64,000 nt of DNA from Macrostomum lignano. Taxonomy: Eukaryota. Location: positions 62,001 to 126,000 of the forward strand of contig NIVC01002528.1 in assembly GCA_002269645.1 (NCBI GenBank), given 5' to 3'. Positions 565-51,100 of the stretch are shown piece after piece (the first letter of the stretch is position 1; each line of letters begins with the position of its first letter). The notes beneath the pieces were generated by a model that saw only the letters and a program-made list of their open reading frames with translations, had not been told where the DNA came from and made no database searches. A program made the position numbers and the translations under genes.

Positions 565-618
565 AAACAGCAAGTAATAAAGTATATGCCAATTCCTATT
601 TAAAATTTCAATTTGCAG

Positions 619-12600: not shown

Positions 12601-15180
12601 CTTCGCCGACTCCGAATCGATTCGGTCTTCTAGGCGAGCCTGTCTCTGTCACTGTCTCGACTGTCTGGGCGACTCGGCTGCTAAAGCATTCTTAGCCGCT
12701 TTGAACGAATCGCCGGTTGAAAGCGCCGCGTTTAAAACTTTGATCTGGGCTCTGGCCAATCATTTGTCGGTGCTGAGGAAGCCGCTGCCCCGACTGGTTT
12801 GCGGCTCCATTGGACCGCTGTGTAGGGCCTTGCAATCTGTCAAGACTGACGACGACAAGGTGAGGGATTTGCTATGAATGAGATTTGTTACAGAATGGAA
12901 TCTGTTACCGAATCCCTAACTGGGGATTCCTAATCCCCCGAATCCCTAGACGGGTATTCCTAATCCCCCGAATCCCTAGACGGGGATTTCTAATCCCCCG
13001 AATCCCTAACTGAGGATTCCTAATCCCCCGAATCCCTAACTCAGGATTCCTAATCCCCCGAATCCCTAACTGAGGATTCCTAATCCCCGAATCCCTAACC
13101 CTAATCCCCCGAATCCCTAACTGAGGATTCCTAATCCCCGAATCCCTAGACGGGATTCCTAATCCCCCGAATCCCTAGACGGGGATTTCTAATCCCCAAA
13201 TCCCTAACTGAAGATTCCTAATCCCCGAATCCCTAACTGAGGATTCCTAATCCCCCGAATCCCTAACTGAGGATTTCTAATCCCCCGAATCCCTAACTGA
13301 GGATTCCTAATCCCCGAATCCCTAACTGAGGATTCCTAATTCCCCGAATACCCAAATGGGATTCCTAATCCCCCAAATCCTGAAGATTCTTTATCCCCCA
13401 GATCCCTGAATGGGGATTCCTAAATCCCTCAAATCCTTAAATGGGATTTCTAATCCCTCGAATCCCTAAAAAGGAATCGTAATCCCTGAATCCCTAAATC
13501 CCTAAATCTCTAACCCCTCTAATCCGTACATGGGATACATAATCCACAGAATCCCTACAAGGGGGTTCCGAAACTTAATCCCTAAAATCCCCAAATCGGA
13601 ATTCCTAATTCACAAAATTACCAAATGGGAAACACAATCTCCTCAAATCCATAAATACGAGTAGCTTTCTAATTTCCCTTCGATTCTCAAAAAAACACAA
13701 ATTTTTAACTGGGTCATTTCAAATTCCAGATAAAAAGCTGTCTCCAACACCTGCCAGCCGTACTAGTCCTAGCCAAGGATTCCGGCCTCCTAGCCGAGTC
13801 CTTGTCGGCCGCTCTGTCCGACACTACCAGATGGCAGGGCCGCAGGGCAGCACTCAACCTGCTACAAGGCCTGGCCTATCACAACGCGTTCCAATTGGAC
13901 CCTGGCAAGCTGCGAGCCCTGGTGCTGGACAGACTGTCCGATCCCACTGTCGAGGTCAGAGAGTGCGCCAGCCAGGCTCTGGGCGGGCTGATGGCCTGCG
14001 GACTGTGCGAATGGACAGATGAACTGTTGCATCAGATGGGCCGGATGACTCAGTCCAAGGACCCGGTTGTCAAGTGAGGCTTTTTTCTTTGGGTTGGTAC
14101 AGTAAAGCTGGTACAGTATCTTCTCATTTGAATCCATCATTCAGACTCTCATACCCTACAAAATCCCATGCCCCACAGAATCCCATATTCTACAGAATCC
14201 CATACCCCACAGACTCCCATACCCTACAGAATCACATACCCTACAGAATCCCATACCCTACAGAATCCCATACCCTACAGAATCACATACCCTACAGAAT
14301 CACATACCCTACAGAATCCCATACCCTACAGAATCACATATCATACAGAATCCCATACCCCACAGAATCACATATCATACAGAATCACATATCATACAGA
14401 ATCACATACCCTACAGAATCCCATACCCCACAGACTCCCATACCCTACAGAATCACATATCATACAGAATCACATACCCCACAGACTCCCATACCCTACA
14501 GAATCACATACCCTACAGAATCACTTACCCTACAGAATCCCATACCCTACAGAATCACATATCATACAGAATCCCATACCCCACAGAATCACATATCATA
14601 CAGAATCACATATCATACAGAATCACATACCCTACAGAATCCCATACCCCACAGACTCCCATACCCTACAGAATCACATATCATACAGAATCCCATACCC
14701 TACAGAATCACATACCCTACAGATTCCCATACCCCACAGACTCCCATACCCTACAGAATCACATATCATACAGAATCCCATACCCTACAGAATCACATAC
14801 CCTACAGAATCCCATACCCCACAGACTCCCATACCCTACAGAATCACATATCATACAGAATCCCATACCCTACAGAATTTAATCTTAAAAATCACCCATC
14901 CCGTCTATCTCCCCCATCCAGGCACGCAGGTGTTCTCGGCCTATGCGCCGCGGTCTCCGCGCACCCGTACACGGTGCCGGATCACCTGCCTGAGCTGGTG
15001 GCCCGCCTCTGCCAGCTGTCTCTGTCAGCCTCCGGTCAAGTCGGTACAGCCGCTAGAAAAGCTGTGAACGATTTCAAGCGTACACACCAGGACGGCTGGG
15101 AGCGGGACAGGGACAAGTTCACGCCAGACCAGCTTTCATTGCTGTCTGACGCTGTTGTTGGTCAGAGCTATTATGCTTGA
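619..15180 (+). CDS. PSME4: Proteasome activator complex subunit 4 (PA200/Blm10), 3' part, 11 exons: 619-1013, 1801-2187, 3596-4067, 4935-5258, 5762-6148, 6618-6770, 7951-8469, 11054-11377, 12290-12859, 13730-14073, 14922-15180. The 5' exons lie upstream of the window.
   Basis: All junctions are GT-AG with matching phases; the joined length is 4134 nt (1377 aa plus stop) with no internal stop. The last exon encodes HAGVLGLCAAVSAHPYTVPDHLP...DFKRTHQDGW...FTPDQLSLLSDAVVGQSYYA*, the characteristic PA200/Blm10 C-terminus with the YYA (HbYX) motif. The preceding exon has a HEAT-like 'D...EVRECASQALGGL'. Confidence 0.93.
1064..1510. repeat. Degenerate 15-18-bp minisatellite (TGACCTAAATGACC[TCC]) in PSME4 intron 1014-1800
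   Basis: Directly visible tandem array. Confidence 0.9.
2330..3450. repeat. 23-bp minisatellite (GAGAAGTAGAGATTGGAATGAGT) in PSME4 intron 2188-3595
   Basis: Directly visible tandem array. Confidence 0.95.
4093..4910. repeat. 23-bp minisatellite (GTAAACACACCTCATCAATCAGT) in PSME4 intron 4068-4934
   Basis: Directly visible tandem array. Confidence 0.95.
5390..5680. repeat. Degenerate 23-bp minisatellite (TTCCAAGAAACACCCCTAACTCA) in PSME4 intron 5259-5761
   Basis: Directly visible tandem array. Confidence 0.9.
6215..6480. repeat. Degenerate 25-bp minisatellite (GTTTCTATGGCCTGGTTGCTATGGT) in PSME4 intron 6149-6617
   Basis: Directly visible tandem array. Confidence 0.85.
6860..7800. repeat. 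33/35-bp minisatellite (ACCCCTAGTTACACCTGATTGTGGGTCACTCTATA) in PSME4 intron 6771-7950
   Basis: Directly visible tandem array with two length variants. Confidence 0.95.
8545..11010. repeat. 19-21-bp minisatellite (TTTTAGAATCGCCCCTGTCTA) in PSME4 intron 8470-11053
   Basis: Directly visible ~2.5-kb tandem array with an internal ~983-bp duplication. Confidence 0.95.
11450..12260. repeat. 31-bp minisatellite (CCCAACCCATATTCTCAAATCCCCTCATTAT) in PSME4 intron 11378-12289
   Basis: Directly visible tandem array. Confidence 0.93.
12910..13620. repeat. ~30-bp minisatellite (CCTAATCCCCCGAATCCCTAACTGAGGATT) in PSME4 intron 12860-13729
   Basis: Directly visible array that degenerates towards its 3' end. 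Confidence 0.9.
14145..14880. repeat. 17-bp minisatellite (CAGAATCCCATACCCTA and variants) in PSME4 intron 14074-14921
   Basis: Directly visible tandem array; it explains the repetitive ORFs 14074..15180 and 14168..15067. Confidence 0.93.
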
Positions 15181-30700: not shown

Positions 30701-31729
30701 GGATGGGGAGCATGGAGTGATTCTCAGGATGGGGAGCTTGAGTGACTGTCAGGATGGGGAGCTTGAGTGACTGTCAGGATGGGGAGCTTGAGTGACTGTC
30801 AGTATGGGCCGAGCTGGAGTGATTCTCAGGATGAGGAACTGGAGTGACTCTCATAGTGAAGATCAGATCTCGAGTGATAAATCAAGAATTCGATGAAGTT
30901 TTCCAGCTTCAAAACTCAGACAGAATACCTTCACCGCTAATTATAGCTTTCAAACTCTTGGATGAACATTTCAAATACTGTAAGAAATTTGTGGGTACCA
31001 ATTAGCTTAGGGTGACTCTGTAAAAAGTTTTAGCCTAAGAGTGAGGATGCCAGAGACAGGGCGGGAAGACACCCGAGGTTGGATACGGGACATCTGGTCC
31101 TTAGTAACGCCCCCCCCCCAGCCCCGAAGCCACAGCCACAACCACAGCTGTTTATTATCCTGGTTCCGACAAAAGAAAAGACTGCTGGAAGTTCTGCTTC
31201 CCAAGAACAGATTTGTATTGGCCTTATTACATTGATTAGCTGTTAAAATAAACAGATTCTGGCGGGAGGGACTTCGGTGTCTAAACGCGTTTTTCCTCAA
31301 ACCGCAACTTCTACCCAGAATCTCTTCCGATGGTTTTGAAGTGGGCTACCTGATTTACTTAAAATGCCAAAAACAAAAATCTCCCGCCGAAAGGGTGGTA
31401 GGTTTCGTTTAGAATCGGGATGGATGGTTCGATACAACTTGAAGAGGTTTTTCAATTCCTCCATTCTATACAGACTGTAGCGGTTCAGTGCTTGCTTTAG
31501 ATTGTAAACAGTTTCCTCTTGTCTAGGAGAATAAGGCCTATAGTGGAGTCTGAACTGTATTGAAATCTGAGTGAATGAATGCTTTCGCCGCCTCCTCCAG
31601 GCATCGGTCGTCCTGGAAAAGGTCACTACTGGACAGTCGACCAGCAGGCGGAGTTCATGTTCGAGGACGGCAGCTACCGACGCAGGCCGCGTGGATTTCG
31701 ACGTAATAAGCCTGGAGCTGCACCTCAAG

Positions 31730-31777
<48 letters not shown>

Positions 31778-32319
31778 TGTTGCAAACTCAATACCAACCT
31801 CAGCAGCAGCACCATCAGCAATACCTGACTTACCCGCCCGTACTGGGACCCTCTGGCGAGTTCAACACTACGGAGCTTCATCATCAAGCTCATCAGCATC
31901 ACCAGGCAGCTCTGACACCAACAGAACCTGGCATGAGTCATCAGCTGGACTGTCACGGCTGCGGCTTGGCCGTAGTGCAACAGTCTTCGTCCTCAGCCAG
32001 CTGGTGCAGTCAGTACCCGGAGCAGCCAGCTGGTGCCGCGGCTGCCGCCGCTGCTGCCGCCGCTGCCAGCAGCTGCTACTTCGGCGTGCACCACCACCAT
32101 CACTACGGATCGGCTGCCGCAGCCGCTGCCGCCGCAGCTGCCGCCGCTGCCAGCACCGGAGCTGCGAGCTACCCCTGGCCTGGAGGCTTCCACCATCACC
32201 AACAGCAACATCAGCTGCAGCATCAGCAGCAACAGCATCACAATTTCCAGGCCTATCATCATCACTCAGAGGCTCTCGTGCCGCCACCGCCACAGCCGCA
32301 TCAAGGCGGCTGCTATTGA
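24760..32319 (+). CDS. FoxF: Forkhead box F transcription factor, 4 exons: 24760-24871, 25523-25999, 29991-30206 (alternative acceptor 29997), 31601-32319; 507 aa
   Basis: The forkhead domain [70 protein letters not shown]|[35 protein letters not shown] is diagnostic of the FoxF class. All three introns are GT-AG in phase 1; the joined length is 1524 nt with no stop. Exon 1 (ATG 24760) is the least certain. Confidence 0.92.
24960..25460. repeat. Degenerate ~30-bp minisatellite (GAGAATCTCACA...ATTGAGACTCTTAC) in FoxF intron 1
   Basis: Directly visible. Confidence 0.85.
26035..26230. repeat. 20-bp minisatellite (TGTAGATGTGGATTGATGTC) in FoxF intron 2
   Basis: Directly visible. Confidence 0.88.
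26808..27762. repeat. 30/31-bp minisatellite (CCATTTTAGATCTGGCGCCTCTCTGTGGGTG) in FoxF intron 2
   Basis: Directly visible. Confidence 0.95.
29240..29905. repeat. 22/23-bp minisatellite (GATGAAGGGTGAGACAGAGACA) in FoxF intron 2
   Basis: Directly visible. Confidence 0.95.
30270..30860. repeat. ~25-bp minisatellite with core GAGTGACTCTCAG and a drifting flank (GGGCTGATCATG changing to GATGGGGAGCTT) in FoxF intron 3
   Basis: Directly visible. Confidence 0.9.
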
Positions 32320-32999
32320 CAACAGAGTGGATAATAAAACCTTGAATTCTGGAGCAATCAGTGCTCGTGTGTCTGGTTTTGTTCGTTAAATTTTATCTTG
32401 AATTCAAATTGGCGCCAAATGGGATACAGTTAAACAATCGTTAAACATCCAAAAAACTTCATTGGGAGTTTCACTTCTTAATAATTAATTTTGGAGTGTT
32501 TAAACGATTATTTATCAGTCTCCCTTTTGAAGTGAATTGAAATTGGATTTAAACAAACAATTTCACCAGACAATATGAAAAACATTCGTTCAGTTTGTTA
32601 TTGCAATCATTTTTGTTTTGAAATTAATTGTTTTGTAAATATAATGCCTTATATTTATGCACTTATTTGTACATTATCTATGCCGCTTTGTCATAGTATA
32701 GAAACGCAAAAAATCATGAAATAAAAACAATCGAACCGTCTTTGCCTTAATAAATTCATGTAATATTAACTATACTCTGTTTTGCAACCTCTCTTATTGA
32801 TATAATACGTTTTGCATCTCAGACAGCGGTACACAGAAGCTTAAATATTCAGTGCGATATGATGTGGCATAATTTACGAGTAAGTAGTAAATCTTGATTG
32901 GATTTGAGCTCTTTATTAAAACTGCTGGTTGTTGGTTGTGCTGCGGAGGGCCACGAAACAGCATTCGAAAATGCTCGTCGGTCAGGTTGAATTTAGCCT

Positions 33000-35210
33000 C
33001 TGGAGCTTGCGCCTCTGGTGCTGGCGCCTCTGGTGCTGGCGCCTCTGGTGCTGGCGCCTCTGGTGCTGGCGCCTCTGGTGCTAAAGCCTCTGGTGCTGGC
33101 GCCTCTGGTGCTGGCGCCTCTGGTGCTGGCGCCTCTGGTGCTGGCGCCTCTGGTGCTGGCGCCTCTGGTGCTGGCGCCTCTGGTGCTGGCGCCTCTGGTG
33201 CTGGCGCCTCTGGTGCTGGCGCCTCTGGTGCTGGCGCCTCTGGTGCTGGCGCCTCTGGTGCTGGCGCCTCTGGTGCTGGCGCCTCTGGTGCTGGCGCCTC
33301 TGGTGCTGGCGCCTCTGGTGCTGGCGCCTCTGGTGCTGGCGCCTGTGGTGCTGGCGCCTCTGGTGCTGGCGCCTCTGGTGCTGGCGCCTCTGGTGCTGGC
33401 GCCTCTGGTGCTGGCGCCTGTGGTGCTGGCGCCTCTGGTGCTGGCGCCTCTGGTGCTAAAGCCTCTGGTGCTAAAGCCTCTGGTGCTAAAGCCTCTGGTG
33501 CTGGCGCCTCTGGTGCTGGCGCCTCTGGTGCTGGCGCCTCTGGTGCTGGCGCCTCTGGTGCTGGCGCCTCTGGTGCTGGCGCCTCTGGTGCTGGCGCCTC
33601 TGGTGCTGGCGCCTCTGGTGCTGGCGCCTCTGGTGCTGGCGCCTCTGGTGCTGGCGCCTCTGGTGCTGGCGCCTCTGGTGCTGGCGCCTCTGGTGCTGGC
33701 GCCTCTGGTGCTGGCGCCTCTGGTGCTGGCGCCTCTGGTGCTGGCGCCTCTGGTGCTGGCGCCTCTGGTGCTGGCGCCTCTGGTGCTGGCGCCTGTGGTG
33801 CTGGCGCCTCTGGTGCTAAAGCCTCTGGTGCTAAAGCCTCTGGTGCTGGCGCCTCTGGTGCTGGCGCCTGTGGTGCTGGCGCCTCTGGTGCTGGCGCCTC
33901 TGGTGCTGGCGCCTCTGGTGCTGGCGCCTCTGGTGCTGGCGCCTCTGGTGCTGGCGCCTCTGGTGCTGGCGCCTCTGGTGCTGGCGCCTCTGGTGCTGGC
34001 GCCTCTGGTGCTGGCGCCTCTGGTGCTGGCGCCTCTGGTGCTGGCGCCTCTGGTGCTGGCGCCTCTGGTGCTGGCGCCTCTGGTGCTGGCGCCTCTGGTG
34101 CTGGCGCCTCTGGTGCTGGCGCCTCTGGTGCTGGCGCCTGTGGTGCTGGCGCCTCTGGTGCTAAAGCCTCTGGTGCTAAAGCCTCTGGTGCTGGCGCCTC
34201 TGGTGCTGGCGCCTGTGGTGCTGGCGCCTCTGGTGCTAAAGCCTCTGGTGCTAAAGCCTCTGGTGCTAAAGCCTCTGGTGCTAAAGCCTCTGGTGCTAAA
34301 GCCTCTGGTGCTGGCGCCTCTGGTGCTGGCGCCTCTGGTGCTGGCGCCTCTGGTGCTGGCGCCTCTGGTGCTGGCGCCTCTGGTGCTGGCGCCTCTGGTG
34401 CTGGCGCCTCTGGTGCTGGCGCCTCTGGTGCTGGCGCCTCTGGTGCTAAAGCCTCTGGTGCTGGCGCCTCTGGTGCTGGCGCCTCTGGTGCTGGCGCCTC
34501 TGGTGCTGGCGCCTCTGGTGCTGGCGCCTCTGGTGCTGGCGCCTCTGGTGCTGGCGCCTCTGGTGCTGGCGCCTCTGGTGCTGGCGCCTCTGGTGCTGGC
34601 GCCTCTGGTGCTGGCGCCTCTGGTGCTGGCGCCTCTGGTGCTGGCGCCTCTGGTGCTGGCGCCTCTGGTGCTGGCGCCTCTGGTGCTGGCGCCTCTGGTG
34701 CTGGCGCCTCTGGTGCTGGCGCCTCTGGTGCTGGCGCCTCTGGTGCTGGCGCCTCTGGTGCTGGCGCCTCTGGTGCTGGCGCCTCTGGTGCTGGCGCCTC
34801 TGGTGCTGGCGCCTCTGGTGCTGGCGCCTGTGGTGCTGGCGCCTCTGGTGCTAAAGCCTCTGGTGCTAAAGCCTCTGGTGCTGGCGCCTCTGGTGCTGGC
34901 GCCTGTGGTGCTGGCGCCTCTGGTGCTAAAGCCTCTGGTGCTAAAGCCTCTGGTGCTAAAGCCTCTGGTGCTAAAGCCTCTGGTGCTAAAGCCTCTGGTG
35001 CTGGCGCCTCTGGTGCTGGCGCCTCTGGTGCTGGCGCCTCTGGTGCTGGCGCCTCTGGTGCTGGCGCCTCTGGTGCTGGCGCCTCTGGTGCTGGCGCCTC
35101 TGGTGCTGGCGCCTCTGGTGCTGGCGCCTCTGGTGCTAAAGCCTCTGGTGCTGGCGCCTCTGGTGCTAAAGCCTCTGGTGCTAAAGCCTCTGGTGCTAAA
35201 GCCTCTGGTG
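33000..35210. repeat. 15-bp minisatellite (GCCTCTGGTGCTGGC; variants CTAAA and GCCTG), ~2.2 kb, downstream of FoxF
   Basis: Directly visible near-perfect array; the diagnostic variants recur at a 690-bp offset (34140/34830, 34215/34905). Confidence 0.97.
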
Positions 35211-37237
35211 ATGAAAGCAAATAATACAATATAAAAACATAAAAATTCCTAATGATTATCCCAAATAGATTTTTAACACATGTATTTTCCTTTCACCCCT
35301 TGATTGAAGCTTCCACACAATGCCATTTCAAGGCAACTTCATTCTACTCCAATTTCAGGACAAATAAAATGGCCATAACACCAATTTGAAGCGGTAAGCA
35401 GTTTTAAGAACCCAAATCCAGTTTAACAGACAGGCCCACCCATACTGTAATTTCGGCATTTAAGCGGTTTTGGTTGGTTATAAAGGCTTTAAGGATTACG
35501 GCGTTCTGTGCGCGATTAAACTTTTGTTGGTGTTTATGTCACAGCACTGAAGCGTAAATTCTTTAAGTGTATATAGGCTGCGGCTTTGCTGACTGTGCAG
35601 TCTACCTTGGCATCTTATATTGTATTTAACTAGTCCGACCAGAGACAAGCTCAAGGTAAATTGCGCGCGTCCTTTATATCATATAACTGGTTGGGGTGAA
35701 GCTGTTGAAGTTGTCTAACGGCGCAAGACCCAGATATTTGACGCTAATTTCTGCTTGCTTGCTTTTATAGATAGTCCTCCATTCGGGTCGTTGAAGCGCT
35801 TTTGAAAGTGGAGCGCGCTGTTGCTATTAAATAAACTGTTACGCAGGTAAACGGCTGCAGCCTGTTGTTGTGAAACAATTTGAAAATTTTCTCTACTTGA
35901 CGCATGCACAGGTCCCACCTCTCTATATTAGCTGTGAAATCTGGCAACTAATATTCCCTCTTTAATGGTTAAAAACCCTCATTTTGCTACTATTAGTAGG
36001 ACAGTATAGTAGGAGATTAGAAGACAATGGAAAGTCAGGCATGGAGATTCTGGATTAAAAAGGAAGTGACAAGAATCTGCGGAATGGAGAATCTCCCCTA
36101 TAGTGTTGAAATGTCAAATCTGAAAGTTAAGAAGGTTGGAACGAAAAAGAACTACTATTTTGCAAACAGAACAGAAGACTCCACTTCAGATGAAGTGAAT
36201 AAAGAATTCGAAGGAGCTTGCGGTGAATGGGAGAAAAGATGGTACGATTTAGTATTGTACGTATTTCATATATTTTTGCTTTGAACGGCATCACCCATAG
36301 ACCTTGGCCTTACGCTCTTCTCTCTGTGGCCTGAATGCCCTCAAAATCCGTAGACCATATAGGCAACTATCCCCATCAAATCGAGATAAAGTCAATCTAA
36401 ATGAGTCAGAATTCATGGATTAGCTGATCCATTACTTTTTTTCTTTCTCAACTTCTTTTTTTTCAAGCAGATTTTGTTAACATGGTTGTTCCAATTGGTC
36501 ATCACTACTTTATACATAAAAGTCATCACTACGAGTACATTGTAATAATATAGACGAAATACTTACGACTAAAATTAGCACCATTAATTGATAGCAAATA
36601 TACATGTAGACACCTGTAGATTGCTTGAATTGAAGATTAAAAACGCATAATGATATTTGTACAACCATTCAATAAAAACAAATATTTGGCATATTGTACA
36701 TTTAGAGTTGAACATTTAGTAAACACAAGCAATCAGCGACCACCATTGGGGAGCCAACAAAGAATGAAATACATTTTTTAATAAACTACGTACACGTAGC
36801 TTCTGACCTTAGCCTCAACATCTCAGCAATTCCCCCGTGAGCCTTGGTTACAGCCAACCTGCATTTTTCTCAAGAAAATTAAATTTGAGTTGCTACTTTT
36901 TAAGGGCCCCCTATAGGGGGCGTAAACTACTAGTCTAATATACTAACAATATAGCTGCACGCATGAGCTACATGTACTACACGTGAAAATTATATGTTCA
37001 GTGTAACAAACACCGAAACCGCCTACTAAAAGTAGCAAACAGTGAATTTCGTCGAACATAAAATAAATGAGCTTTCATTAGAAAATCATTAAATAAAACA
37101 CGAATGCATTCCGTGTTGAGTTGAAGCAAAATTAAAATCGACCAATTCAAAATTAACAATTCCTTAAAAAACGCATTCAAAAACAAATCAGAAACTAACA
37201 AAAGTCCTCATCAGAAAATATTGAGCTTTTCGTTAAC

Positions 37238-40200
37238 TTAAAAAATCAGCGAGAAATCCGACAAATCTTCCACCATCTCTTTTCGCAATTTCTCAAAGCT
37301 GTGCCTCTTTGCGGTTATCTTGTACCAGGTGTCTCGGTTCAGATACTCATCGCTGTTGTCTCCCACGGCGCACAGCTCAGATTCCAGCAGCTTCTTACTG
37401 AAGTTAAAATGCTTTTGATCAAAATTGGCCGAGGTTATAACCGCTTGAACTGGCTCGCTTACGTCGTCTGGAGGGCAGTAGGCCAGAATCTTCGAGTGGC
37501 AGTAGTATAGCCTCTGCTTGAGAGACCCTTGACTCATCTCCTGCCAGTGAACCTCCACTGACTTGAGCTCGGACGCTAATTTGACGAAGAGTTCCGGTTT
37601 ATCGCGGTAGCACAGAGTCAGCTTGACTCTGGAGCCTTCAGCGTCGCGTTGTTTCAAGATGTTTGCCAGGTAAACAGCGTTGAGATTCCGCTTGGGATTA
37701 AAGAAATTCTTTTGCGAATTAAAGAATGGCGACAAGATGAAAACTTCGCCTCCGAGAGGCTGGCTGAACCACTCGAGTAGAGTAGCGTCCAGCAGGTGGA
37801 TGAGCTGGTCGGATGTGAATTGTAAATCATCCAGCTCGATTATAATTAATGAGCTGTCAGGCTTTCCCGACGATTTGTTCTCCTTCACTATTGGACTGCT
37901 AGTACATGGTGCACTTGCAAAGTGGCCGGTCGATGGTTGAACGTCTGAGACAATGGACCAATGTATATGTGGTATGCGCGAGTGAACAAACAATAAGTAC
38001 ACGAGCTCATACGGTAATAATGGTCTGTGCTCGTTTGCTTAGACAGGGTCCCCTGGACGAGAACTTGAGATACTACATGAGAATCTCTAGATGGGTGTGT
38101 CTACCCGTACAACAATCCGACGTCGCACCGACCTCTGAACCGACGTCGTACGACGTCTATGTAACATTACGTGTTTCCTATTGGTCGGACGTCGGGCCGA
38201 CGTCGAAGTCGTAGTCCAAAAATTTATTTCGCGCTTCTTTAACATTTATTTTCGCGGGATGAACTGGCAAGCAATACTGTTATGCTTAATTTAATTATTT
38301 AAGGCGAATAACGTGAATTAAGGCGAATTTAATTTTTCGACTACGACTTCGACGTCAGCCCGACGTCCGACCAATAGGAAACACGTAATGTTACATAGAC
38401 GTCGTACGACGTCGGTCAGATACGTCGGATTGTTGTACGGGCTAGGACCTATAGATGGGTGTGTCTAGAATCTCTAGATGGGTGTGTCTAGGATCTATAG
38501 ATGGGTGTGTCTAGAATCTCTAGATGGGTGTGTCTAGGATCTATAGATGGGTGTGTCTATGATCTATAGATGGGTGTGTCTAGGATCTCTAGATAGGTGT
38601 GTCCTATGATCTCTATATAGGTGTGTCTAGGATCTATAGATGGGTGTGCAGGATCTCTAGATGGGTATGCAGGATCTCTAGATGGGTGTGTCTAGGATCT
38701 ATAGATGGGTGTGCAGGATCTCTAGATGGGTATGCAGGATCTCTAGATGGGTGTGTCTATGATCTCTAGATGGGTGTGTCTAGGATCTATAGATGGGTGT
38801 GTCTATGTTCTCTAGATGGGTGTGTCTAGGATCTCTAGATGTGTGTGTCTAGGATCTCTAGATGGGTGTGTCTATGATCTCTAGATAGGTGTGTCCTATG
38901 ATCTCTATATAGGTGTGTCTAGGATCTATAGATGGGTGTGCAGGATCTCTAGATGGGTATGCAGGATCTCTAGATGGGTGTGCAGGATCTCTAGATGGGT
39001 GTGCAGGATCTATAAATGGGTAGGCAGCATCTATAGATAAATGCCAGGTTCTGTAGATATGTGGTTTCCAGGGGCCTCTGGTTCTCTAAAAGTCTGGGAT
39101 GAGATCCATGAAATTCTGGCGGGATTTACTCTGCCCGAGCGGTAATTCCAATAAAACTATAAACTTAGATAAATGTGAACATTATTTAACTATTTATTAA
39201 TCTGCCCAACAAGGCCAGAACAGATATCTCATAACTTACCAGTTCGCATCAATTTAGTTGGAGTGGCGTATTCTTTGAGTATGTTCCATTCAATATCGTC
39301 ATAGCTACTCATGGTTGCTGCGCGTTTACGAGCAGAGACAGTGGCATTGTCATTCGACTCAGGTGACCAGGTTGTTCCGGTGAGCTCGGTCCTCTGCACC
39401 AGCTGATTGACTAAGCTGTTCGAATCTAAATTGTAATAATTCATTTATTCATGTAAGGATTGTTTGATTTATTGAATAATCTTTCAGTTTACTAGTACTA
39501 ATTCCTTTATTGATTGTTTATCCCTTCATTGATTACTTCATATACCAATTGATCGATCGATTGATTAATTGCTAGACTGATTGATTGATTGATAGATTGA
39601 TTGCTGGGTTTCATTAATTGATTGACTGATTGATTGATTGATTGATTGATTGACTGATTGATTGATTGACTGATTGATTGCTGGGTTGATTGATTGATTG
39701 CTGGGTTTCATTGATTAATTGCTGGGTTTCATTGATTGATTGACTGATTGATTGATTGACTGATTGATTGACTGACTGATTGATTGACTGATTGATTGAT
39801 TGACTGATTGATTGCTGGGTTGATTGATTGATTGCTGGGTTTCATTGATTAATTGCTGGGTTTCATTGATTGATTGACTGATTGATTGATTGATTGATTG
39901 ACTGATTGATTGATTGACTGATTGATTGCTGGGTTGATTGATTGATTGATTGATTGATTGACTGATTGATTGATTGCTGGGTTTCATTGATTGATTGCTG
40001 GGTTTCATTGATTGATTGACTGATTGATTGATTGACTGATTGATTGATTGACTGATTGATTGACTGACTGACTGATTGATTGACTGATTGATTGATTGAC
40101 TGATTGATTGCTGGGTTGATTGATTGATTGATTGATTGATTGACTGATTGATTGATTGCTGGGTTTCATTGATTGATTGACTGATTGATTGACTGACTGA

Positions 40201-41111
40201 TTGATTGATTGCTTGATTGCTGGTCTGATTGATTGCTTGATTCATTTACTCGTTAATTCATTCATTGCTTGCCTGAAAGGAACCGATATCATTTCAAAGA
40301 GCTAACGTTTGGAACAAAATTTCGAGAGGCATCGAGAATCCCTAATTAAACATTGGAACCGAGAAAAATATTTTTTTGTACACGACGGCAAAAATTTCGA
40401 GTGACCTTATAGCCTGGTAAAGTACCGGTCATTTATAAAATGCTACTTAGAAGTAGAGTAATACAAACACTCGCTGTATAACAAAATAATAAATCGTTAT
40501 GAAAAAACAATCAAACAATTAATAAACAACGAATTACCGAAAGTAGAGTTACAGCTAGGCTAGGCTGCTTATTAAAAAACCAATTTCCGTTGAATTTTTA
40601 GTTCCGATACCCCTAAGAGGTTTATTGATTTGATTATTGATTGAACCTAATCACGATACCCTAGACGCCTAGAGTAACAGGATTTAGTTACTCAGTTATT
40701 CAGATTCAGTTATTCAGAGAAAGATGCCCTTTCTGGAGGACCTAATTGGTATTATGGTAAATTGATAACATTATTAGACCGCATCCTAGTTGTGTTTTCG
40801 AACTTTCGAGCTCGGGTAATAGTAAAAGCTCCCACGAATTGAATTGTTTTGTATAAACTACAGTTGCTCTTGTAAGTACGGAGTCTGTAACCATAAGTGA
40901 TCACTAAAATTTGTTCTCAGACTTGCGGTCTAAAGTCTCTCCTCTCTCACTCTCTCTGTCTCTCTCCTCTCTCTTTCTCTCTCCCCTCTCTCTCTCTCTG
41001 TCTCCCTCTCTAATGTAATAATTCACATCAAAATTGACAAATAAAAAAGCAAGCAATCAACAACACTTTACCTGTCGAATTGTCCAGATTTTCCCGTCGA
41101 GTTTGAGACAT
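37238..41111 (-). CDS. Uncharacterised protein with a putative single phospholipase-D/nuclease (HKD-like) domain; 3 exons 41111-41072, 39425-39240, 37944-37238; ~310 aa
   Basis: Both introns are GT-AG in phase 1 (ACA G|gtaaag...atttag|AT TCG; ACT G|gtaagt...tctcag|AC GTT), and both contain tandem arrays like the other genes' introns. The 235-codon last exon is non-repetitive and has EVFILSPFF ... YCHSKILAY ... QAVITSANF, which match the PLD-superfamily pattern (I-x-SP; HxK; [GT]SxN). The fold call is from motif recognition only. Confidence 0.62.
38075..39040. repeat. 21/23-bp minisatellite (TCTAGATGGGTGTGTCTAGGATC) in intron 2 of the PLD-like gene
   Basis: Directly visible; interrupted near its start by a MITE. 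Confidence 0.92.
38104..38441. mobile_element. 338-bp non-autonomous DNA transposon (MITE) with ~115-bp TIRs (CCCGTACAACAATCCGACGT...) and a 3-bp TSD, CTA
   Basis: The arms are near-perfect reverse complements apart from one ~10-bp indel. CTA occurs at 38101-38103 and 38442-38444. Removing the element and one CTA approximately restores a minisatellite unit (GTGTGT-CTA-GGACCTATAGATGGG). Confidence 0.88.
39545..40250. repeat. (TGAT)n-based microsatellite with GCTGGGTTTC interruptions, intron 1 of the PLD-like gene
   Basis: Directly visible. Confidence 0.93.
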
Positions 41112-41825
41112 GCTTCTTTTAAAACAGAGGAACAAGAAAAGTAGAAGATTAACGGAGAACAAGCGAAGAGCCGGCTTGCAAGAAGTTTCTTGAACAGAGA
41201 GGAGCGTCTGGCTTATCCTTATATACCTGGAATTAAGGCATTCCTTCACTGGGGGGGGGGGCGGGTGGATCCAGAGAGGGAGAGAGAAAATGGGATTGAC
41301 AATGTACATATCAATAGAACTTGCTGGCTCCTGCATGTGCTGCTTCAGGACTGTATCCGCAAACTGTCAAGGTAGGCCCCCACACCCTCCTGAGATAGAC
41401 ACGGAGTCACCCTCCACCCATGCGATGACTCATAATTTTTTCGAATATAAATCTGTGCACACACGGTGGATCTGCTCGCTATAACGCTGGGCCCGCATCA
41501 CCATTTGTTAGAACTGTCTGAGTCATAACCCCAACCTTCCAACACTTCCAATGGTAGATTAGATAACACTGCCCCGGAGTCGTGAAATGGCTGAATATGA
41601 ATAAGGGATGAGGCCCATATTAGTTTAGCTAATTTTAGACATCTATAATGAAATAACCATGGCTTAGAAATTTTCCAGAGACTCCAGGAGCGATCAGCGA
41701 TTTCAGGCATCTTGGTCTCCTCCCTTCGGTGCCTCCGATTTTAGCTTAAAATTAGCTTAAAAATTAATTTTTTTAAACAGCTCATCTGAAAAATAACGGC
41801 CAGACGGTTCTCTAAAAAATCATTT

Positions 41826-42502
<677 letters not shown>

Positions 42503-43150: not shown

Positions 43151-49297
<6,147 letters not shown>

Positions 49298-49678
49298 GGC
49301 TTGAGCTTAGCTATATCGATTTCTAGATGATACTTTGCAGGTTTGAAGAATCCTGATTTTCGCTGGGCCTGATCCGAGATTAAATATATAGACTTCAATT
49401 TCAATGCAAATGATACATCTGCAGGGTTGGTTGCGTTGGTCAACCTGTCATCATGCAGAATTATACGGCTTTATTTAATGGCTTGCAGCTTAGATTTACT
49501 TCCAATTAAGTATAAGTTTCCCTTGATCAAGAATCAGAGATCGTCACGGATATCACGTCAAATACTGTAAAGTGCATGATGGGCATTAATAGTTCCAAAT
49601 TCGATCTCATTAAATGCTACAGTACTTAACTTACTCTTGCCTACTATAAATCAATATTGCTTAGTCTATATCCTTCTA

Positions 49679-51100
49679 TACCTTTTTACGTTCTATTTGA
49701 TAAAAACTGCAACCAATTTGGCCACGGCTCAGCCTGACCATAGACATAGAATTTTCCATAGACAGCCACCGCCAGCGGCAACCAATCTGGTAAAAACTGC
49801 GAGCTATTTTGCCAGCTTGAAGATAGCAGCTGCTCTGATGGCGAATCGTGGGCCGTACCAAAAGATAAGTCAGCTGGATCGAGAGCGAATCGTGAGAGCG
49901 TACAGGAGTGGCGACGACTGGGGAGAGCTTGGCAGAATGATGGGGATGAAGAAACCGACAGTGAGGAACATCGTGACCACGTATGAACGAACTGGTAGAG
50001 TTGGCACTCTGCCAAAAGGAGGAGTGAAGAGGATGGCGCTGACGGAGGCTATGGTGGACACCATTGTTCAATTCGTCGAAGGTCAACCTACTGCGACGCT
50101 GCAACAAATGAGAGAGCACCTGCTGCACCAACACAATGACGTTGCCAACGTGAGTCTGACCACTATCAGTCGTGCTCTGGATGGTCGCCTCATCACCCTG
50201 AAGTTACTGCGCCAGGTACCTGTGAACTGGAACATGCCTGTTACAAAGGAGGCGCGAAGGATGCACGTTGAATGGATGCTGGACGAGGGAAGCCAGGTGA
50301 ACACCATCTTCATGGACGAGTTTGGGGTGAACATCTGGACGGCGAGGACTCAAGGCCGCTCAGCGAAGGGGCTCCCAGCTGTGACTGTCGTCAGCGGACA
50401 GCGTGGGCAGAATCTCACCATCTGCCTGGCCATCTCGCAACTCGGCCTGATTCACAGCACTCTCGTCGAAGGAGGCTTTAAGAACGAGCACTTCATGGAA
50501 TTCCTCTCTGAGATCGATGTTCTGATGGAAGAGGAGTTTGTGCTACTGTCCGATGGGGCTCGCACTCACCTAGGTGTCCCTGGGATGTCTGAAGGTCATG
50601 CTCACCGATTCCTGCCTCCATACTCGCCGTTCATCAACCCGGCGGAGTACGCAGGCTCAGCGCTGAAGGCCAAGCTGAAAACGCAATTGCAATCACCTGC
50701 CATTCAGCTCGAGGTGGCAGATACTGGACTGGCTGCTGCAGCAGGTGCGACACTGCATCAGCACAGGATGCGCATTCTGAAGAGAGAAGTGCAGCAAGCA
50801 CTGAACTGCATCACGCCTCTCAAGTGCCTGCGCTGGATCAACCATTCCCAGACGTACTTCAATCGGTGCTTGAATGCTGAGGACATAATGTTCTGACTTC
50901 GTGCATGTATTGTTAACATTCTTTATCGTTATTGTTATGCTATTGAGCTGCTATCTTCAAGCTGGCAAAATAGCTCGCAGTTTTTACCAAATTGGTTGCC
51001 GCTATAGCGGTGGCTGTCTATGGAAAATTCTATGTCTATGGTCAGGCTGAGCCGTGGCCAAATTGGTTGCAGTTTTTATCAAATAGAACGTAAAAAGGAA
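49679..51100 (+). mobile_element. Full-length IS630/Tc1/mariner DNA transposon, 1422 bp, with ~150-bp TIRs (about 49679-49831 and 50946-51100) and TA flanks
   Basis: The left end ...CCTTTTTACGTTCTATTTGATAAAAACTGC... is the reverse complement of the right end ...GCAGTTTTTATCAAATAGAACGTAAAAAGG, with only a few substitutions and one small indel across the TIR. TA occurs at 49677-49678 and 51101-51102. The element contains one intact transposase ORF. Confidence 0.92.
49838..50896 (+). CDS. DDE_3-type (IS630/Tc1) transposase, 352 aa, catalytic triad D...D-x30-E
   Basis: ATG at 49838 (MANRGPY...). N-terminal paired-like HTH pattern (RERIVRAY...TVRNIV...TGRV...GG), IFMDE, GQRGQNLT, LLSDGARTH, FLPPYSPFINPAE. 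No stops or frameshifts. Confidence 0.92.
   Translation: MANRGPYQKISQLDRERIVRAYRSGDDWGELGRMMGMKKPTVRNIVTTYERTGRVGTLPKGGVKRMALTEAMVDTIVQFVEGQPTATLQQMREHLLHQHNDVANVSLTTISRALDGRLITLKLLRQVPVNWNMPVTKEARRMHVEWMLDEGSQVNTIFMDEFGVNIWTARTQGRSAKGLPAVTVVSGQRGQNLTICLAISQLGLIHSTLVEGGFKNEHFMEFLSEIDVLMEEEFVLLSDGARTHLGVPGMSEGHAHRFLPPYSPFINPAEYAGSALKAKLKTQLQSPAIQLEVADTGLAAAAGATLHQHRMRILKREVQQALNCITPLKCLRWINHSQTYFNRCLNAEDIMF

What the first reader, a model, noticed from the sequence alone, without database searches (positions are those of the whole stretch)
37238..41111. Orphan spliced gene encoding a stand-alone PLD/HKD-like domain (candidate nuclease or phosphodiesterase)
Seen: three exons join in phase to give ~310 aa, with a low-complexity S/T-rich N-terminus and a compact alpha/beta C-terminal region containing EVFILSPFF, YYCHSKILAYC and QAVITSANF. 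Established: PLD-superfamily catalytic half-sites are HxK(x4)D followed by G/T-S-x-N. Single-motif members (Zucchini/PLD6, bacterial Nuc, BfiI) act as homodimeric nucleases, and TDP1 uses HxK...TSAN without the Asp. Here the +7 position is Cys rather than Asp, there is only one motif, and I see no N-terminal transmembrane anchor like PLD6 and no second domain like TDP1. Inference: an uncharacterised animal PLD-fold family, possibly a dimeric nuclease acting in small-RNA or transposon defence or in DNA end repair, in a repeat- and TE-dense genome. A strong acceptor just before the ATG (…ctgttttaaaag|aag|c ATG) allows an in-frame upstream exon (41710-41502, weak GTGATG donor).
Basis: partly seen in the sequence, partly recalled or inferred. 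Interest (0 to 1): 0.7.

Follow-up and report, generated by a model that had tools for sequence, protein, structure and literature searches.

The report
Flatworm orphan gene with PLD-like motif
This is a real three-exon gene of the flatworm Macrostomum lignano whose 310-residue protein has no detectable relatives and carries one short motif like the catalytic half-site of TDP1 and other phospholipase-D-type enzymes, but I could not confirm the fold, so an enzyme role is plausible and unproven.

Summary
Exons 41111-41072, 39425-39240 and 37944-37238 on the minus strand join in phase through GT/AG sites to give 310 aa. All quoted peptides are present.

The only relative among 5.8 and 1.84 billion proteins is a 98%-identical Macrostomum lignano UniProt entry, A0A1I8G658. 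It has the same exon junctions and an automatic name, 'Tyrosyl-DNA phosphodiesterase'. The gene is therefore modelled already, low-copy and lineage-restricted.

The protein has a disordered S/T-rich N-terminus of about 105 aa and an alpha/beta domain of about 200 aa. The domain carries one H225-S-K227...T246-S-A-N249 site.

Evidence for a PLD fold is consistent but weak:
- Pfam TDP1 and NgoFVII-PLD models hit the motif at 12-13 bits, below their cut-offs. Ten shuffles that kept only the six motif residues gave no such hit.
- My TDP1 profile finds no similarity outside a 31-aa segment.
- AlphaFold2 models are of low confidence (pLDDT 38 and 56), and Foldseek finds no PLD structure.

My best reading, at about 0.45, is a highly diverged single-site PLD-superfamily phosphodiesterase or nuclease that must dimerise. 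It is not a TDP1 family member, because it lacks the second site. The main rival is a coincidental motif in an orphan alpha/beta protein.

The proposed upstream exon is not supported. Interest is modest.

The parts
41072..41111 (-). Exon 1, coding part: ATG at 41111-41109, residues 1-13 plus one base. Donor CAG|gtaaag. ATG context aagaagcATGt, with A at -3.
   Evidence: tblastn of the spliced protein
39426..41071 (-). Intron 1 (1646 nt). It holds an (ATTG)n array at 39548-40246 and a (TC)n tract at 40936-41011.
39240..39425 (-). Exon 2 (186 nt), residues 14-75. Acceptor tttag|, donor CTG|gtaagt.
37945..39239 (-). Intron 2 (1295 nt). It holds a 23-bp minisatellite at 38442-39038 and a 338-bp palindromic MITE-like element at 38104-38441.
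37238..37944 (-). Exon 3 (707 nt), residues 76-310 plus the TAA stop at 37240-37238. Acceptor ctcag|.
37271..37855 (-). Predicted alpha/beta domain, residues 106-300. The AF2 domain-only model shows b-a-b-a-b-a-b in its first half at pLDDT 60-83.
37424..37498 (-). The single HKN-type half-site: H225 (37498-37496), K227, C232 in place of Asp, and T246-S247-A248-N249 (N249 at 37426-37424).
37721..37738 (-). ILSPFF (residues 145-150), a strand-plus-SPFF element. By eye it resembles the 'I-x-(T/S)-P-Y-F' strand of PLDc_2-type domains. This resemblance was not tested statistically.
   Evidence: resemblance from my own knowledge only
41218..41225 (-). TATATAAG, a TATA-box-like site 114 nt upstream of the ATG. 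It is one of only 5 TATAWAAG sites on both strands of the 64-kb window.
41502..41710 (-). I judge it NOT part of the gene. It has a weak GTGATG donor, is in frame only with the second AG, lies upstream of the TATA-like site, and is absent from the UniProt model.

Best explanation
This is a real, low-copy, Macrostomum-restricted protein-coding gene. It has its own TATA-type promoter, three coding exons and a 310-aa product.

The protein has a disordered, S/T-rich N-terminal region of about 105 residues and an alpha/beta domain of about 200 residues. I read that domain as a very diverged single copy of the phospholipase-D-superfamily domain.

The domain carries one 'HKN'-type half-site: His225-x-Lys227, then a loop, then Thr-Ser-Ala-Asn249, with no Asp. 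This is the variant otherwise typical of TDP1.

One PLD active site needs two half-sites. The protein would therefore have to pair, most simply as a homodimer like Nuc, Zucchini and BfiI.

By analogy it would cut a phosphodiester bond in two steps. One His225 attacks the phosphorus to form a covalent phospho-histidine intermediate. The partner His225' acts as general acid and base. Lys227 and Asn249 hold the phosphate. The likely substrate is a nucleic-acid backbone or a 3'-end adduct.

Shown: the gene structure, the motif, the lack of relatives, and the sub-threshold PLD-clan profile hits. Inferred: the fold, dimerisation, catalysis and substrate.
For: Gene:
- Canonical in-phase splice sites.
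- A 235-codon non-repetitive open frame with P about 4e-6.
- The same junctions in an independent UniProt model of a 98%-identical copy.
- A TATA-like site 114 nt upstream of the ATG.

Low copy and lineage-restricted:
- One hit only in 5.8e9 proteins and in 1.84e9 representatives.
- The hit's cluster has one member.
- There is no paralogue in the window.

PLD-like site:
- There is one H-x-K and one TSAN, 24 residues from His to Asn, against 20 and 23 in human TDP1 (PMC5778467).
- The motif with hydrophobic flanks occurs in about 1e-4 of random 310-aa sequences. The bare motif occurs in 0.35-0.96%.
- Pfam hits fall on this region in 9 of the 14 fragments tested, always to PLD-clan models. They are PF09565 in 8 fragments (11.5-12.8 bits) and PF06087 in 1 (12 bits, profile 309-374 of 445, the second HKN site).
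- Ten shuffles with only the six motif residues fixed gave 0 PLD hits and 4 unrelated chance hits.
- The 31-aa motif segment scores z = 5.2 and 5.8 against the two halves of a vertebrate-plus-fungal TDP1 profile.
- The whole domain scores z about 3 against each half. That is more than mouse PLD6, a true PLD member, reaches.

Other:
- UniProt's automatic name for the near-identical copy is 'Tyrosyl-DNA phosphodiesterase'.
- The order of secondary-structure elements in the AF2 models is compatible with a Nuc-like single PLD domain, by eye.
Against: - No profile hit reaches a curated cut-off: 12-12.8 bits against 22 and 23.8. The full-length protein hits nothing in Pfam, NCBIfam or PADLOC, and PHROGs gives only one chance-level match to a family of unknown function.
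- phmmer against all PDB sequences finds no PLD protein.
- hhalign probabilities against TDP1 and Nuc/PLD6 profiles are below 1%.
- A Nuc/PLD6/NucT HMM finds nothing, z = -0.7.
- Outside the 31-aa motif segment there is no similarity to TDP1. Upstream z is -0.5. Downstream z is 0.7 for the C half and 2.4 for the N half.
- With the six residues fixed, the native context adds z = 0.4 for the C half and 2.3 for the N half.
- AF2 confidence is low: pLDDT 38 for the full length and 56 for the domain. The better model draws the HSK segment as a helix, not the strand a PLD fold needs. Foldseek against PDB gives only generic Rossmann-like matches at E >= 0.02, with no PLD or TDP1 in the top 50.
- The profile hits are not independent of the motif that caused the finding to be picked.
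Confidence: 0.45

Rival explanations
1. This is an orphan alpha/beta protein of a different, Rossmann-like or novel fold. The HSK...TSAN resemblance is coincidental, and UniProt's name is an over-prediction keyed on the same few residues. The function would then be unrelated to phosphodiester hydrolysis.
For: - All similarity to TDP1 sits in six residues and their immediate flanks.
- Every profile hit is below threshold.
- Equally weak hits to unrelated families appear for the real protein: SL4P at E 0.03-0.1, and NYN at E 0.16. They also appear for shuffles.
- The AF2 domain model is a parallel b-a-b sandwich with a helix over the HSK segment. Its best Foldseek matches are generic Rossmann-like domains.
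- The bare motif arises in 0.35-0.96% of random sequences.
Against: - With hydrophobic flanks, the motif's chance frequency falls to about 1e-4.
- Sub-threshold hits fall repeatedly on two models of the same clan at the same site. They vanish when the context is shuffled.
- An independent pipeline named the protein a TDP.
- The AF2 model is too weak to contradict a PLD fold.
Confidence: 0.3
2. The gene is a remnant or offshoot of a TDP1-type gene that kept only one half-domain. It is now either a non-catalytic PLD-like scaffold, as in FAM83-type pseudo-enzymes, or a decaying duplicate.
For: - The motif is the TDP1-specific HKN/TSAN variant.
- The Pfam TDP1 model aligns residues 186-250 to its second site.
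- UniProt gives it a TDP name.
- M. lignano is a recent hidden polyploid with many duplicates (PMC10468722, abstract seen).
- The protein has half the size of a TDP1 catalytic region.
Against: - No similarity to either TDP1 half exists outside the motif, so any split from TDP1 would be ancient.
- Both copies keep an intact frame with only 6 substitutions in 298 residues.
- His, Lys and Asn are all retained, which pseudo-enzymes often lose.
- No second half lies anywhere in the 64-kb window.
Confidence: 0.15
3. This is not a functional gene. It is a fortuitous or transposon-derived open reading frame that gene predictors stitched into a model.
For: - No transcript evidence could be examined here. 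Look-ups of the exact proteins found no assembled contig.
- The surroundings are dense in repeats and transposons.
- No AATAAA lies close to the stop. The first ATTAAA is about 450 nt downstream.
Against: - The 235-codon complex open frame has P about 4e-6.
- Three exons join in phase through consensus sites.
- A TATA-like site sits at the expected distance upstream.
- The frame is intact in a second copy.
- Only one related protein exists in the databases, so this is not a multi-copy element.
Confidence: 0.05
4. The gene was acquired horizontally from a bacterial or viral PLD nuclease of the Nuc, NgoFVII or BfiI type and has since gained introns.
For: The most frequent sub-threshold Pfam hit is to a bacterial restriction-enzyme PLD domain, PF09565.
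Against: - No prokaryotic or viral relative exists among 1.84e9 representatives.
- tblastn against 72,556 plasmids gave only chance matches. The best was a Shewanella hypothetical protein with no HKD motif.
- Scans of IMG/VR and JGI metagenome contigs found none.
- The N-terminal third of the protein is encoded across two introns.
Confidence: 0.03

Closest known systems
TDP1, tyrosyl-DNA phosphodiesterase 1 (Pfam PF06087; human 1JY1, yeast 1Q32)
   Same: - It shares the HKN variant of the PLD site: His-x-Lys, no Asp, and Thr-Ser-Ala-Asn. Compare human HIKTYMR...VTSANL, yeast HSKFYMH...YTSANL, and this protein's HSKILAY...ITSANF.
- The His-to-Asn spacing is 24 here, against 20 and 23 in human TDP1.
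- The Pfam TDP1 model aligns its second site to residues 186-250.
- Both proteins have a disordered Ser-rich N-terminus.
- UniProt gives the near-identical copy a TDP name.
   Different: - TDP1 has two HKN sites in one chain and works as a monomer (PMC5778467). This protein has one site and about half the catalytic size.
- There is no second half in the window.
- It scores 12 bits against a gathering cut-off of 22.
- There is no similarity outside the motif.
Single-HKD PLD nucleases: Nuc (1BYR), Zucchini/PLD6 (4GGJ), NucT (6EHI)
   Same: They share the architecture: one half-site per chain in a compact alpha/beta domain of 150-200 residues, which has to dimerise. By eye, the order of secondary-structure elements is the same.
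   Different: - Those proteins have the canonical HxKxxxxD...GSxN motif with 17-residue spacing. Here Cys replaces the Asp, Thr replaces the Gly, and an 8-residue loop is inserted.
- There is no profile similarity. HMMER finds no hit, hhalign gives P 0.26, and z is -0.7.
- There is no N-terminal membrane anchor like that of PLD6.
PLD-type restriction endonuclease domains (NgoFVII, PF09565; BfiI)
   Same: This is the most reproducible Pfam hit, at 11.5-12.8 bits in 8 fragments. It covers residues from about 202 to 277, the motif plus about 28 residues beyond it. BfiI is a dimer with one active site at the interface (PMC2853115, abstract seen).
   Different: The hit is below the gathering cut-off of 23.8 bits. 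Those enzymes are bacterial and carry a DNA-recognition domain, and no such domain is present here. No bacterial homologue was found.
FAM83 DUF1669 pseudo-PLD domains (from my own knowledge; seen as a weak Nuc relative)
   Same: They are animal proteins, restricted to particular lineages, with a single diverged PLD-like domain used without a partner half-site.
   Different: FAM83 proteins mostly lack the catalytic His and act as scaffolds. This protein keeps the His, Lys and Asn. I made no sequence comparison with FAM83.

Membership tests
PLD superfamily (Pfam clan of PLDc, PLDc_2, Tyr-DNA_phospho, RE_NgoFVII and related families) | Catalytic motif HxK(x)4D(x)6G(S/T)xN, or its HKN variant | tested here: inconclusive
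   H225-S-K227 and T246-S-A-N249 are present once each. Cys232 replaces the Asp, and the His-to-Asn spacing is 24. The chance frequency is 0.35-0.96% for the bare motif and about 1e-4 with hydrophobic flanks.
PLD superfamily | Significant match to a profile of a member family | tested here: not met
   The best scores are PF09565 at 12.8 bits (cut-off 23.8) and PF06087 at 12.0 bits (cut-off 22), on fragments only. The full-length protein gives no hit. hhalign probabilities are below 1%. In a control, shuffles keeping the six motif residues gave 0 of 10 PLD hits.
PLD superfamily | PLD alpha/beta sandwich fold, with the HxK and GSxN segments on adjacent antiparallel strands | tested here: inconclusive
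   The AF2 models have pLDDT 38 and 56. The HSK segment is modelled as a helix at pLDDT about 60. Foldseek against PDB finds no PLD or TDP1 match and nothing better than E 0.02. The models are too weak to decide.
PLD superfamily | Two half-sites per active site, from an internal duplication or a homodimer | not testable with these tools
   There is one half-site per chain. No multimer prediction or biochemistry was available.
TDP1 family (PF06087 / 'tyrosyl-DNA phosphodiesterase family') | Two HKN motifs in one chain, in N- and C-terminal domains, forming the active site of a monomer (PMC5778467) | tested here: not met
   There is one motif only, in a domain of about 200 residues. tblastn with human TDP1 and with the protein itself finds no second half in the window.
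TDP1 family | Sequence similarity across the catalytic domain, not only at the motif | tested here: not met
   I compared it with a profile of 22 vertebrate and 54 fungal TDP1 sequences. HMMER gives P about 0.02 per half. Upstream of the motif z is -0.5. Downstream z is 0.7 and 2.4. With the motif residues fixed, the context adds z = 0.4 and 2.3.
TDP1 family | Named as such by a curated or automatic source | tested here: inconclusive
   UniRef names A0A1I8G658 'Tyrosyl-DNA phosphodiesterase', but no Pfam domain is on record for it. I could not identify the signature behind the name.
Zucchini/PLD6-type nucleases | N-terminal mitochondrial membrane anchor plus a single canonical HKD domain | tested here: not met
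   There is no hydrophobic segment in residues 1-105 (maximum KD19 of 0.28). The Asp is absent. There is no similarity to a Nuc/PLD6/NucT profile.

The most novel reading that the evidence does not exclude
The protein is a stand-alone 'half-TDP1'. It would be an animal enzyme with a single HKN site that builds a TDP1-like active site by homodimerisation. That would make it a living analogue of the pre-duplication ancestor of TDP1, or a new PLD family that converged on the HKN chemistry. It would be confined to Macrostomum flatworms and act on DNA or RNA ends.
Probability: 0.2. Interest if true: 0.6.

Novelty: new variant of a known kind. Interest (0 to 1): 0.3.

Why it matters
If the PLD reading is right, this is the first single-site protein with the TDP1-type HKN chemistry. 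It would show that this chemistry can work, or once worked, in a homodimer. It would also add a lineage-specific nucleic-acid-processing enzyme to a regeneration and stem-cell model that already has RNAi and transgenesis.

If the reading is wrong, the case is a useful caution. A six-residue motif and an automatic database name can make an orphan protein look like an enzyme.

Either way, the gene is one ordinary taxonomically restricted gene among many in this genome. Nothing here ties it to transposon or small-RNA biology.

Tried and rejected
Searches and tests that found nothing useful:
- The full-length protein against Pfam, NCBIfam, PADLOC and PHROGs gave no relevant hit.
- phmmer against all PDB sequences gave nothing, or one chance hit to 3nm7 at E = 1.
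- A vertebrate-only TDP1 HMM and hhalign gave nothing.
- Adding 54 fungal TDP1 sequences improved the result only to P about 0.02, at the motif.
- A Nuc/PLD6/NucT profile gave nothing.
- AF2 on the full-length single sequence was unusable at pLDDT 38, and its Foldseek hits to ribosomal protein eS7 are meaningless.
- AF2 on the domain alone was still weak at pLDDT 56, and Foldseek returned only generic matches.
- I chose not to spend the last AF2 job on an alignment padded with TDP1 rows. That would have imposed the answer.
- tblastn against plasmids gave chance hits. The best, a Shewanella hypothetical protein, has no HKD motif.
- Scans of metagenome and viral contigs found no relative.
- Exact-sequence look-ups for encoding contigs found nothing, and the look-up of the spliced product was not accepted.
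- Literature searches for Macrostomum with TDP1 or 'tyrosyl-DNA phosphodiesterase' found no paper.

Ideas I rejected:
- A hidden second TDP1 half downstream of the stop or elsewhere in the window.
- The upstream exon 41710-41502.
- The AG just before the ATG as a spliced-leader acceptor. It does not fit the [T/C]TNCAG motif reported for M. lignano, and by my own arithmetic the leader's terminal ATG would be out of frame.
- A multi-copy transposon ORF.
- The sub-threshold SL4P and NYN Pfam hits. They are of the same strength as hits that shuffled sequences give.


Full report
1. What is in the sequence

Read on the minus strand, the region has an ATG at 41111. A 40-nt coding stretch ends at CAG|gtaaag (41072). 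A 186-nt exon runs from 39425 to 39240, bounded by tttag| and CTG|gtaagt. A 707-nt exon runs from 37944 to 37238, entered through ctcag| and closed by TAA.

A scripted join gives 933 nt, in phase, and 310 residues. The splice sites fit the GT[G/A]AG and CAG consensus described for Macrostomum lignano (PMC8629364).

The last exon lies in a 254-codon open frame of non-repetitive sequence. Stops occur at 0.0515 per codon in this window, so 235 stop-free codons have a chance of about 4e-6 per start. Most other long 'ORFs' of the window are tandem-repeat artefacts.

There is one H-x-K (H225) and one [GST]-S-x-N (T246-N249). Cys232 sits at +7, and there is no hydrophobic anchor in the first 105 residues, which are 27% Ser+Thr.

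2. Whose gene it is

A word-indexed search of 5.8 billion proteins returned one hit. An exhaustive phmmer scan of 1.84 billion cluster representatives returned the same one. It is UniRef A0A1I8G658 of Macrostomum lignano, 298 aa and 98% identical.

That model has the same start Met and the same two exon junctions, with 6 substitutions over 298 residues. It stops 12 residues short of this copy. Its cluster has a single member, and the window's exact product is not in the collection.

The window is therefore M. lignano, or something very close to it. M. lignano is a recent hidden polyploid (PMC10468722, abstract seen), which explains a 98% twin.

The gene is low-copy, so it is not a transposon ORF. 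It has no paralogue in the window. It has no detectable relative in any other organism, prokaryote or virus.

'Orphan' is correct for homology but not for annotation. A gene model exists, and UniProt names it automatically 'Tyrosyl-DNA phosphodiesterase'.

3. Ends of the gene

TATATAAG lies at 41225-41218, 114 nt upstream of the ATG on the coding strand. Only five TATAWAAG sites occur on both strands of the 64 kb. By my own estimate, the chance of one falling in a 200-nt upstream stretch on the right strand is below 1%. The ATG has A at -3.

It is in frame only if the second AG (exon start 41112) is used, and the first AG gives TGA. It lies upstream of the TATA-like site and is absent from the UniProt model. 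I do not count it as part of the gene.

M. lignano does use spliced-leader trans-splicing. The AG before the ATG does not fit the reported [T/C]TNCAG acceptor, so I leave that idea aside.

No AATAAA follows the stop closely. The first ATTAAA is about 450 nt downstream. I could not examine any transcript data.

4. Is the domain a PLD/HKD domain?

Direct tests were negative or below threshold.
- The full-length protein hits nothing in Pfam, NCBIfam, PADLOC or the PDB sequences. PHROGs gives only one chance-level match, at E 0.13, to a family of unknown function.
- I tested 14 fragments against Pfam. Nine gave a hit on the motif region, always to a PLD-clan model.
- PF09565, the NgoFVII restriction endonuclease PLD domain, hit in 8 fragments at 11.5-12.8 bits (E 0.075-0.19).
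- PF06087, Tyr-DNA_phospho, hit in 1 fragment at 12.0 bits (E 0.092). It aligned residues 186-250 to profile 309-374 of 445, the second HKN site.
- Both models score below their gathering cut-offs of 23.8 and 22 bits.
- Equally weak hits to unrelated families (SL4P, NYN) also appear.

As a control, I shuffled fragment 176-300 ten times with only H225, K227 and T246-N249 held in place. None of the ten gave a PLD-clan hit, and four gave unrelated hits of the same strength. The PLD hits therefore need the native context, not just six residues. Ten shuffles is a small number.

5. Is it a TDP1?

I collected 120 vertebrate TDP1 sequences and 57 fungal ones. The yeast query was verified against 1Q32.

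- The vertebrate-only profile found nothing.
- The combined profile of 22 vertebrate and 54 fungal sequences aligned HSK...TSAN to either TDP1 HKN site, but only at P about 0.02. hhalign probabilities stayed below 1%.
- A PSSM alignment with shuffle statistics gave z = 2.7 and 3.0 for the whole domain against the C and N halves.
- The signal sits entirely in the 31-residue motif segment, at z = 5.2 and 5.8. The 120 residues upstream score z = -0.5. The 60 residues downstream score z = 0.7 and 2.4.
- With the six motif residues fixed, the context adds z = 0.4 for the C half and 2.3 for the N half.

The method has little power across PLD families. Nuc reaches z = 5.4 against the TDP1 N half but -0.3 against the C half. 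Mouse PLD6 reaches 1.2 and -0.3. A null result outside the motif is therefore what one sees between true but distant PLD members.

TDP1 is defined by two HKN motifs in one monomeric chain (PMC5778467). This protein has one, and no second half exists in the window. It is not a TDP1 family member, whatever the automatic name says. At most it shares the HKN variant of the site.

6. Structure prediction

AlphaFold2 on the full-length single sequence gave pLDDT 38. Its Foldseek hits are noise.

The domain alone, with its twin as the only alignment row, gave pLDDT 56 and pTM 0.55. It shows a b-a-b-a-b-a-b first half at pLDDT 60-83. The HSK segment is drawn as a helix at pLDDT about 60.

Foldseek against PDB found only generic Rossmann-like domains at E >= 0.02, with no PLD or TDP1 in the top 50. 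This does not support the PLD fold. It is also too weak to refute it. The first half of a PLD domain is itself a b-a-b-a-b unit, a point from my own knowledge of Nuc (1BYR).

7. Weighing the evidence

The bare motif arises in 0.35-0.96% of random 310-aa sequences. With hydrophobic flanks it arises in about 1e-4. Those patterns were written after seeing the sequence, and real proteins cluster hydrophobic residues more than random strings do.

PLD-fold proteins are perhaps one in a thousand animal genes (my own estimate). The motif alone therefore gives odds around even to a few to one in favour. The clan-specific sub-threshold hits, the shuffle control and the independent database name push the odds up. 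The AF2 helix and the lack of any extra-motif similarity push them down.

I put a genuine PLD-superfamily domain at roughly 0.6. This covers the catalytic reading at 0.45 and the diverged or non-catalytic TDP1-derived reading at 0.15. A coincidental motif in another fold gets 0.3, and the remainder goes to a non-gene or horizontal transfer.

8. Mechanism I commit to

The steps here are inferred, not shown.

One half-site per chain means the protein must pair, as Nuc, Zucchini and BfiI do (BfiI: PMC2853115). One His225 would attack the phosphorus to form a phospho-histidine intermediate. The partner His225' would protonate the leaving group and then activate water. Lys227 and Asn249 would bind the phosphate. 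This is the scheme established for TDP1 and the PLD superfamily (PMC5778467).

The substrate would be a nucleic-acid phosphodiester or 3' adduct. The disordered Ser/Thr-rich N-terminus, which contains an ARKRAA stretch, would be a regulatory or localisation tail.

Nothing here speaks to small-RNA or transposon defence.

9. Verdict

The gene and the motif are real. The homology-orphan status is real. The PLD interpretation is plausible and unproven. TDP1 membership fails its defining test. The upstream exon is unlikely.

This is a lineage-restricted variant of a known kind of domain, already modelled and auto-named in UniProt, and of modest interest. Orthologue sequences from other Macrostomum species would settle most of the open questions quickly.

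Noticed in passing
window 613-15180 (+): A multi-exon gene for a PSME4/PA200-like proteasome activator. Pfam gives HEAT_PSME4_mid on the exons at 613-1032 and 3543-4121, and PSME4_C at E 1.5e-29 on the last exon, about 14800-15180. A tandem repeat sits inside the long ORF 14074-15180.
   Followed up: partly
window 49637-50896 (+): An apparently intact 419-aa Tc1/mariner-type transposase ORF, with HTH_32, HTH_SB and DDE_3 hits (E 1.9e-14). I did not look for terminal inverted repeats.
   Followed up: partly
window 38104-38441: A 338-bp palindromic MITE-like element lies in intron 2 of the gene. It has perfect 20-nt outer inverted repeats and 94-nt inner arms that are 96% complementary. It sits within or at the edge of a 23-bp minisatellite (38442-39038), whose unit resumes on the other side.
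   Followed up: partly
window 39548-40246, 40936-41011, 41826-42500, 32794-35229 and many others: The window is very dense in micro- and minisatellites, such as (ATTG)n, (TC)n, (ACAG)n and a 15-bp unit open in three frames. These produce most of the long mechanical ORFs in the window. They are not genes.
   Followed up: partly
window 31579-32319 (+): This ORF begins with GKGHYWTVD...RRRPRGFRR, which by eye is the C-terminal end of a forkhead domain. Long polyQ, polyA and polyH tracts follow. Pfam was silent on this exon, so the call rests on my own reading only.
   Followed up: partly
window 47514-48346 (-): These are MFS-transporter-like exons (MFS_1, E 0.0018, below cut-off), upstream of the gene on the same strand. 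One is interrupted in its ORF by a (TDRQ)n repeat. At about 6 kb away, with repeats in between, it is too far to suggest an operon with the gene studied.
   Followed up: no
P0001 (UniRef A0A1I8G658) versus the window product: The database twin ends at residue 298 (...FEKLRKE), whereas the window copy continues MVEDLSDFSLIF to the stop. I could not check whether that reflects a real difference, a truncated contig or a different gene model.
   Followed up: no
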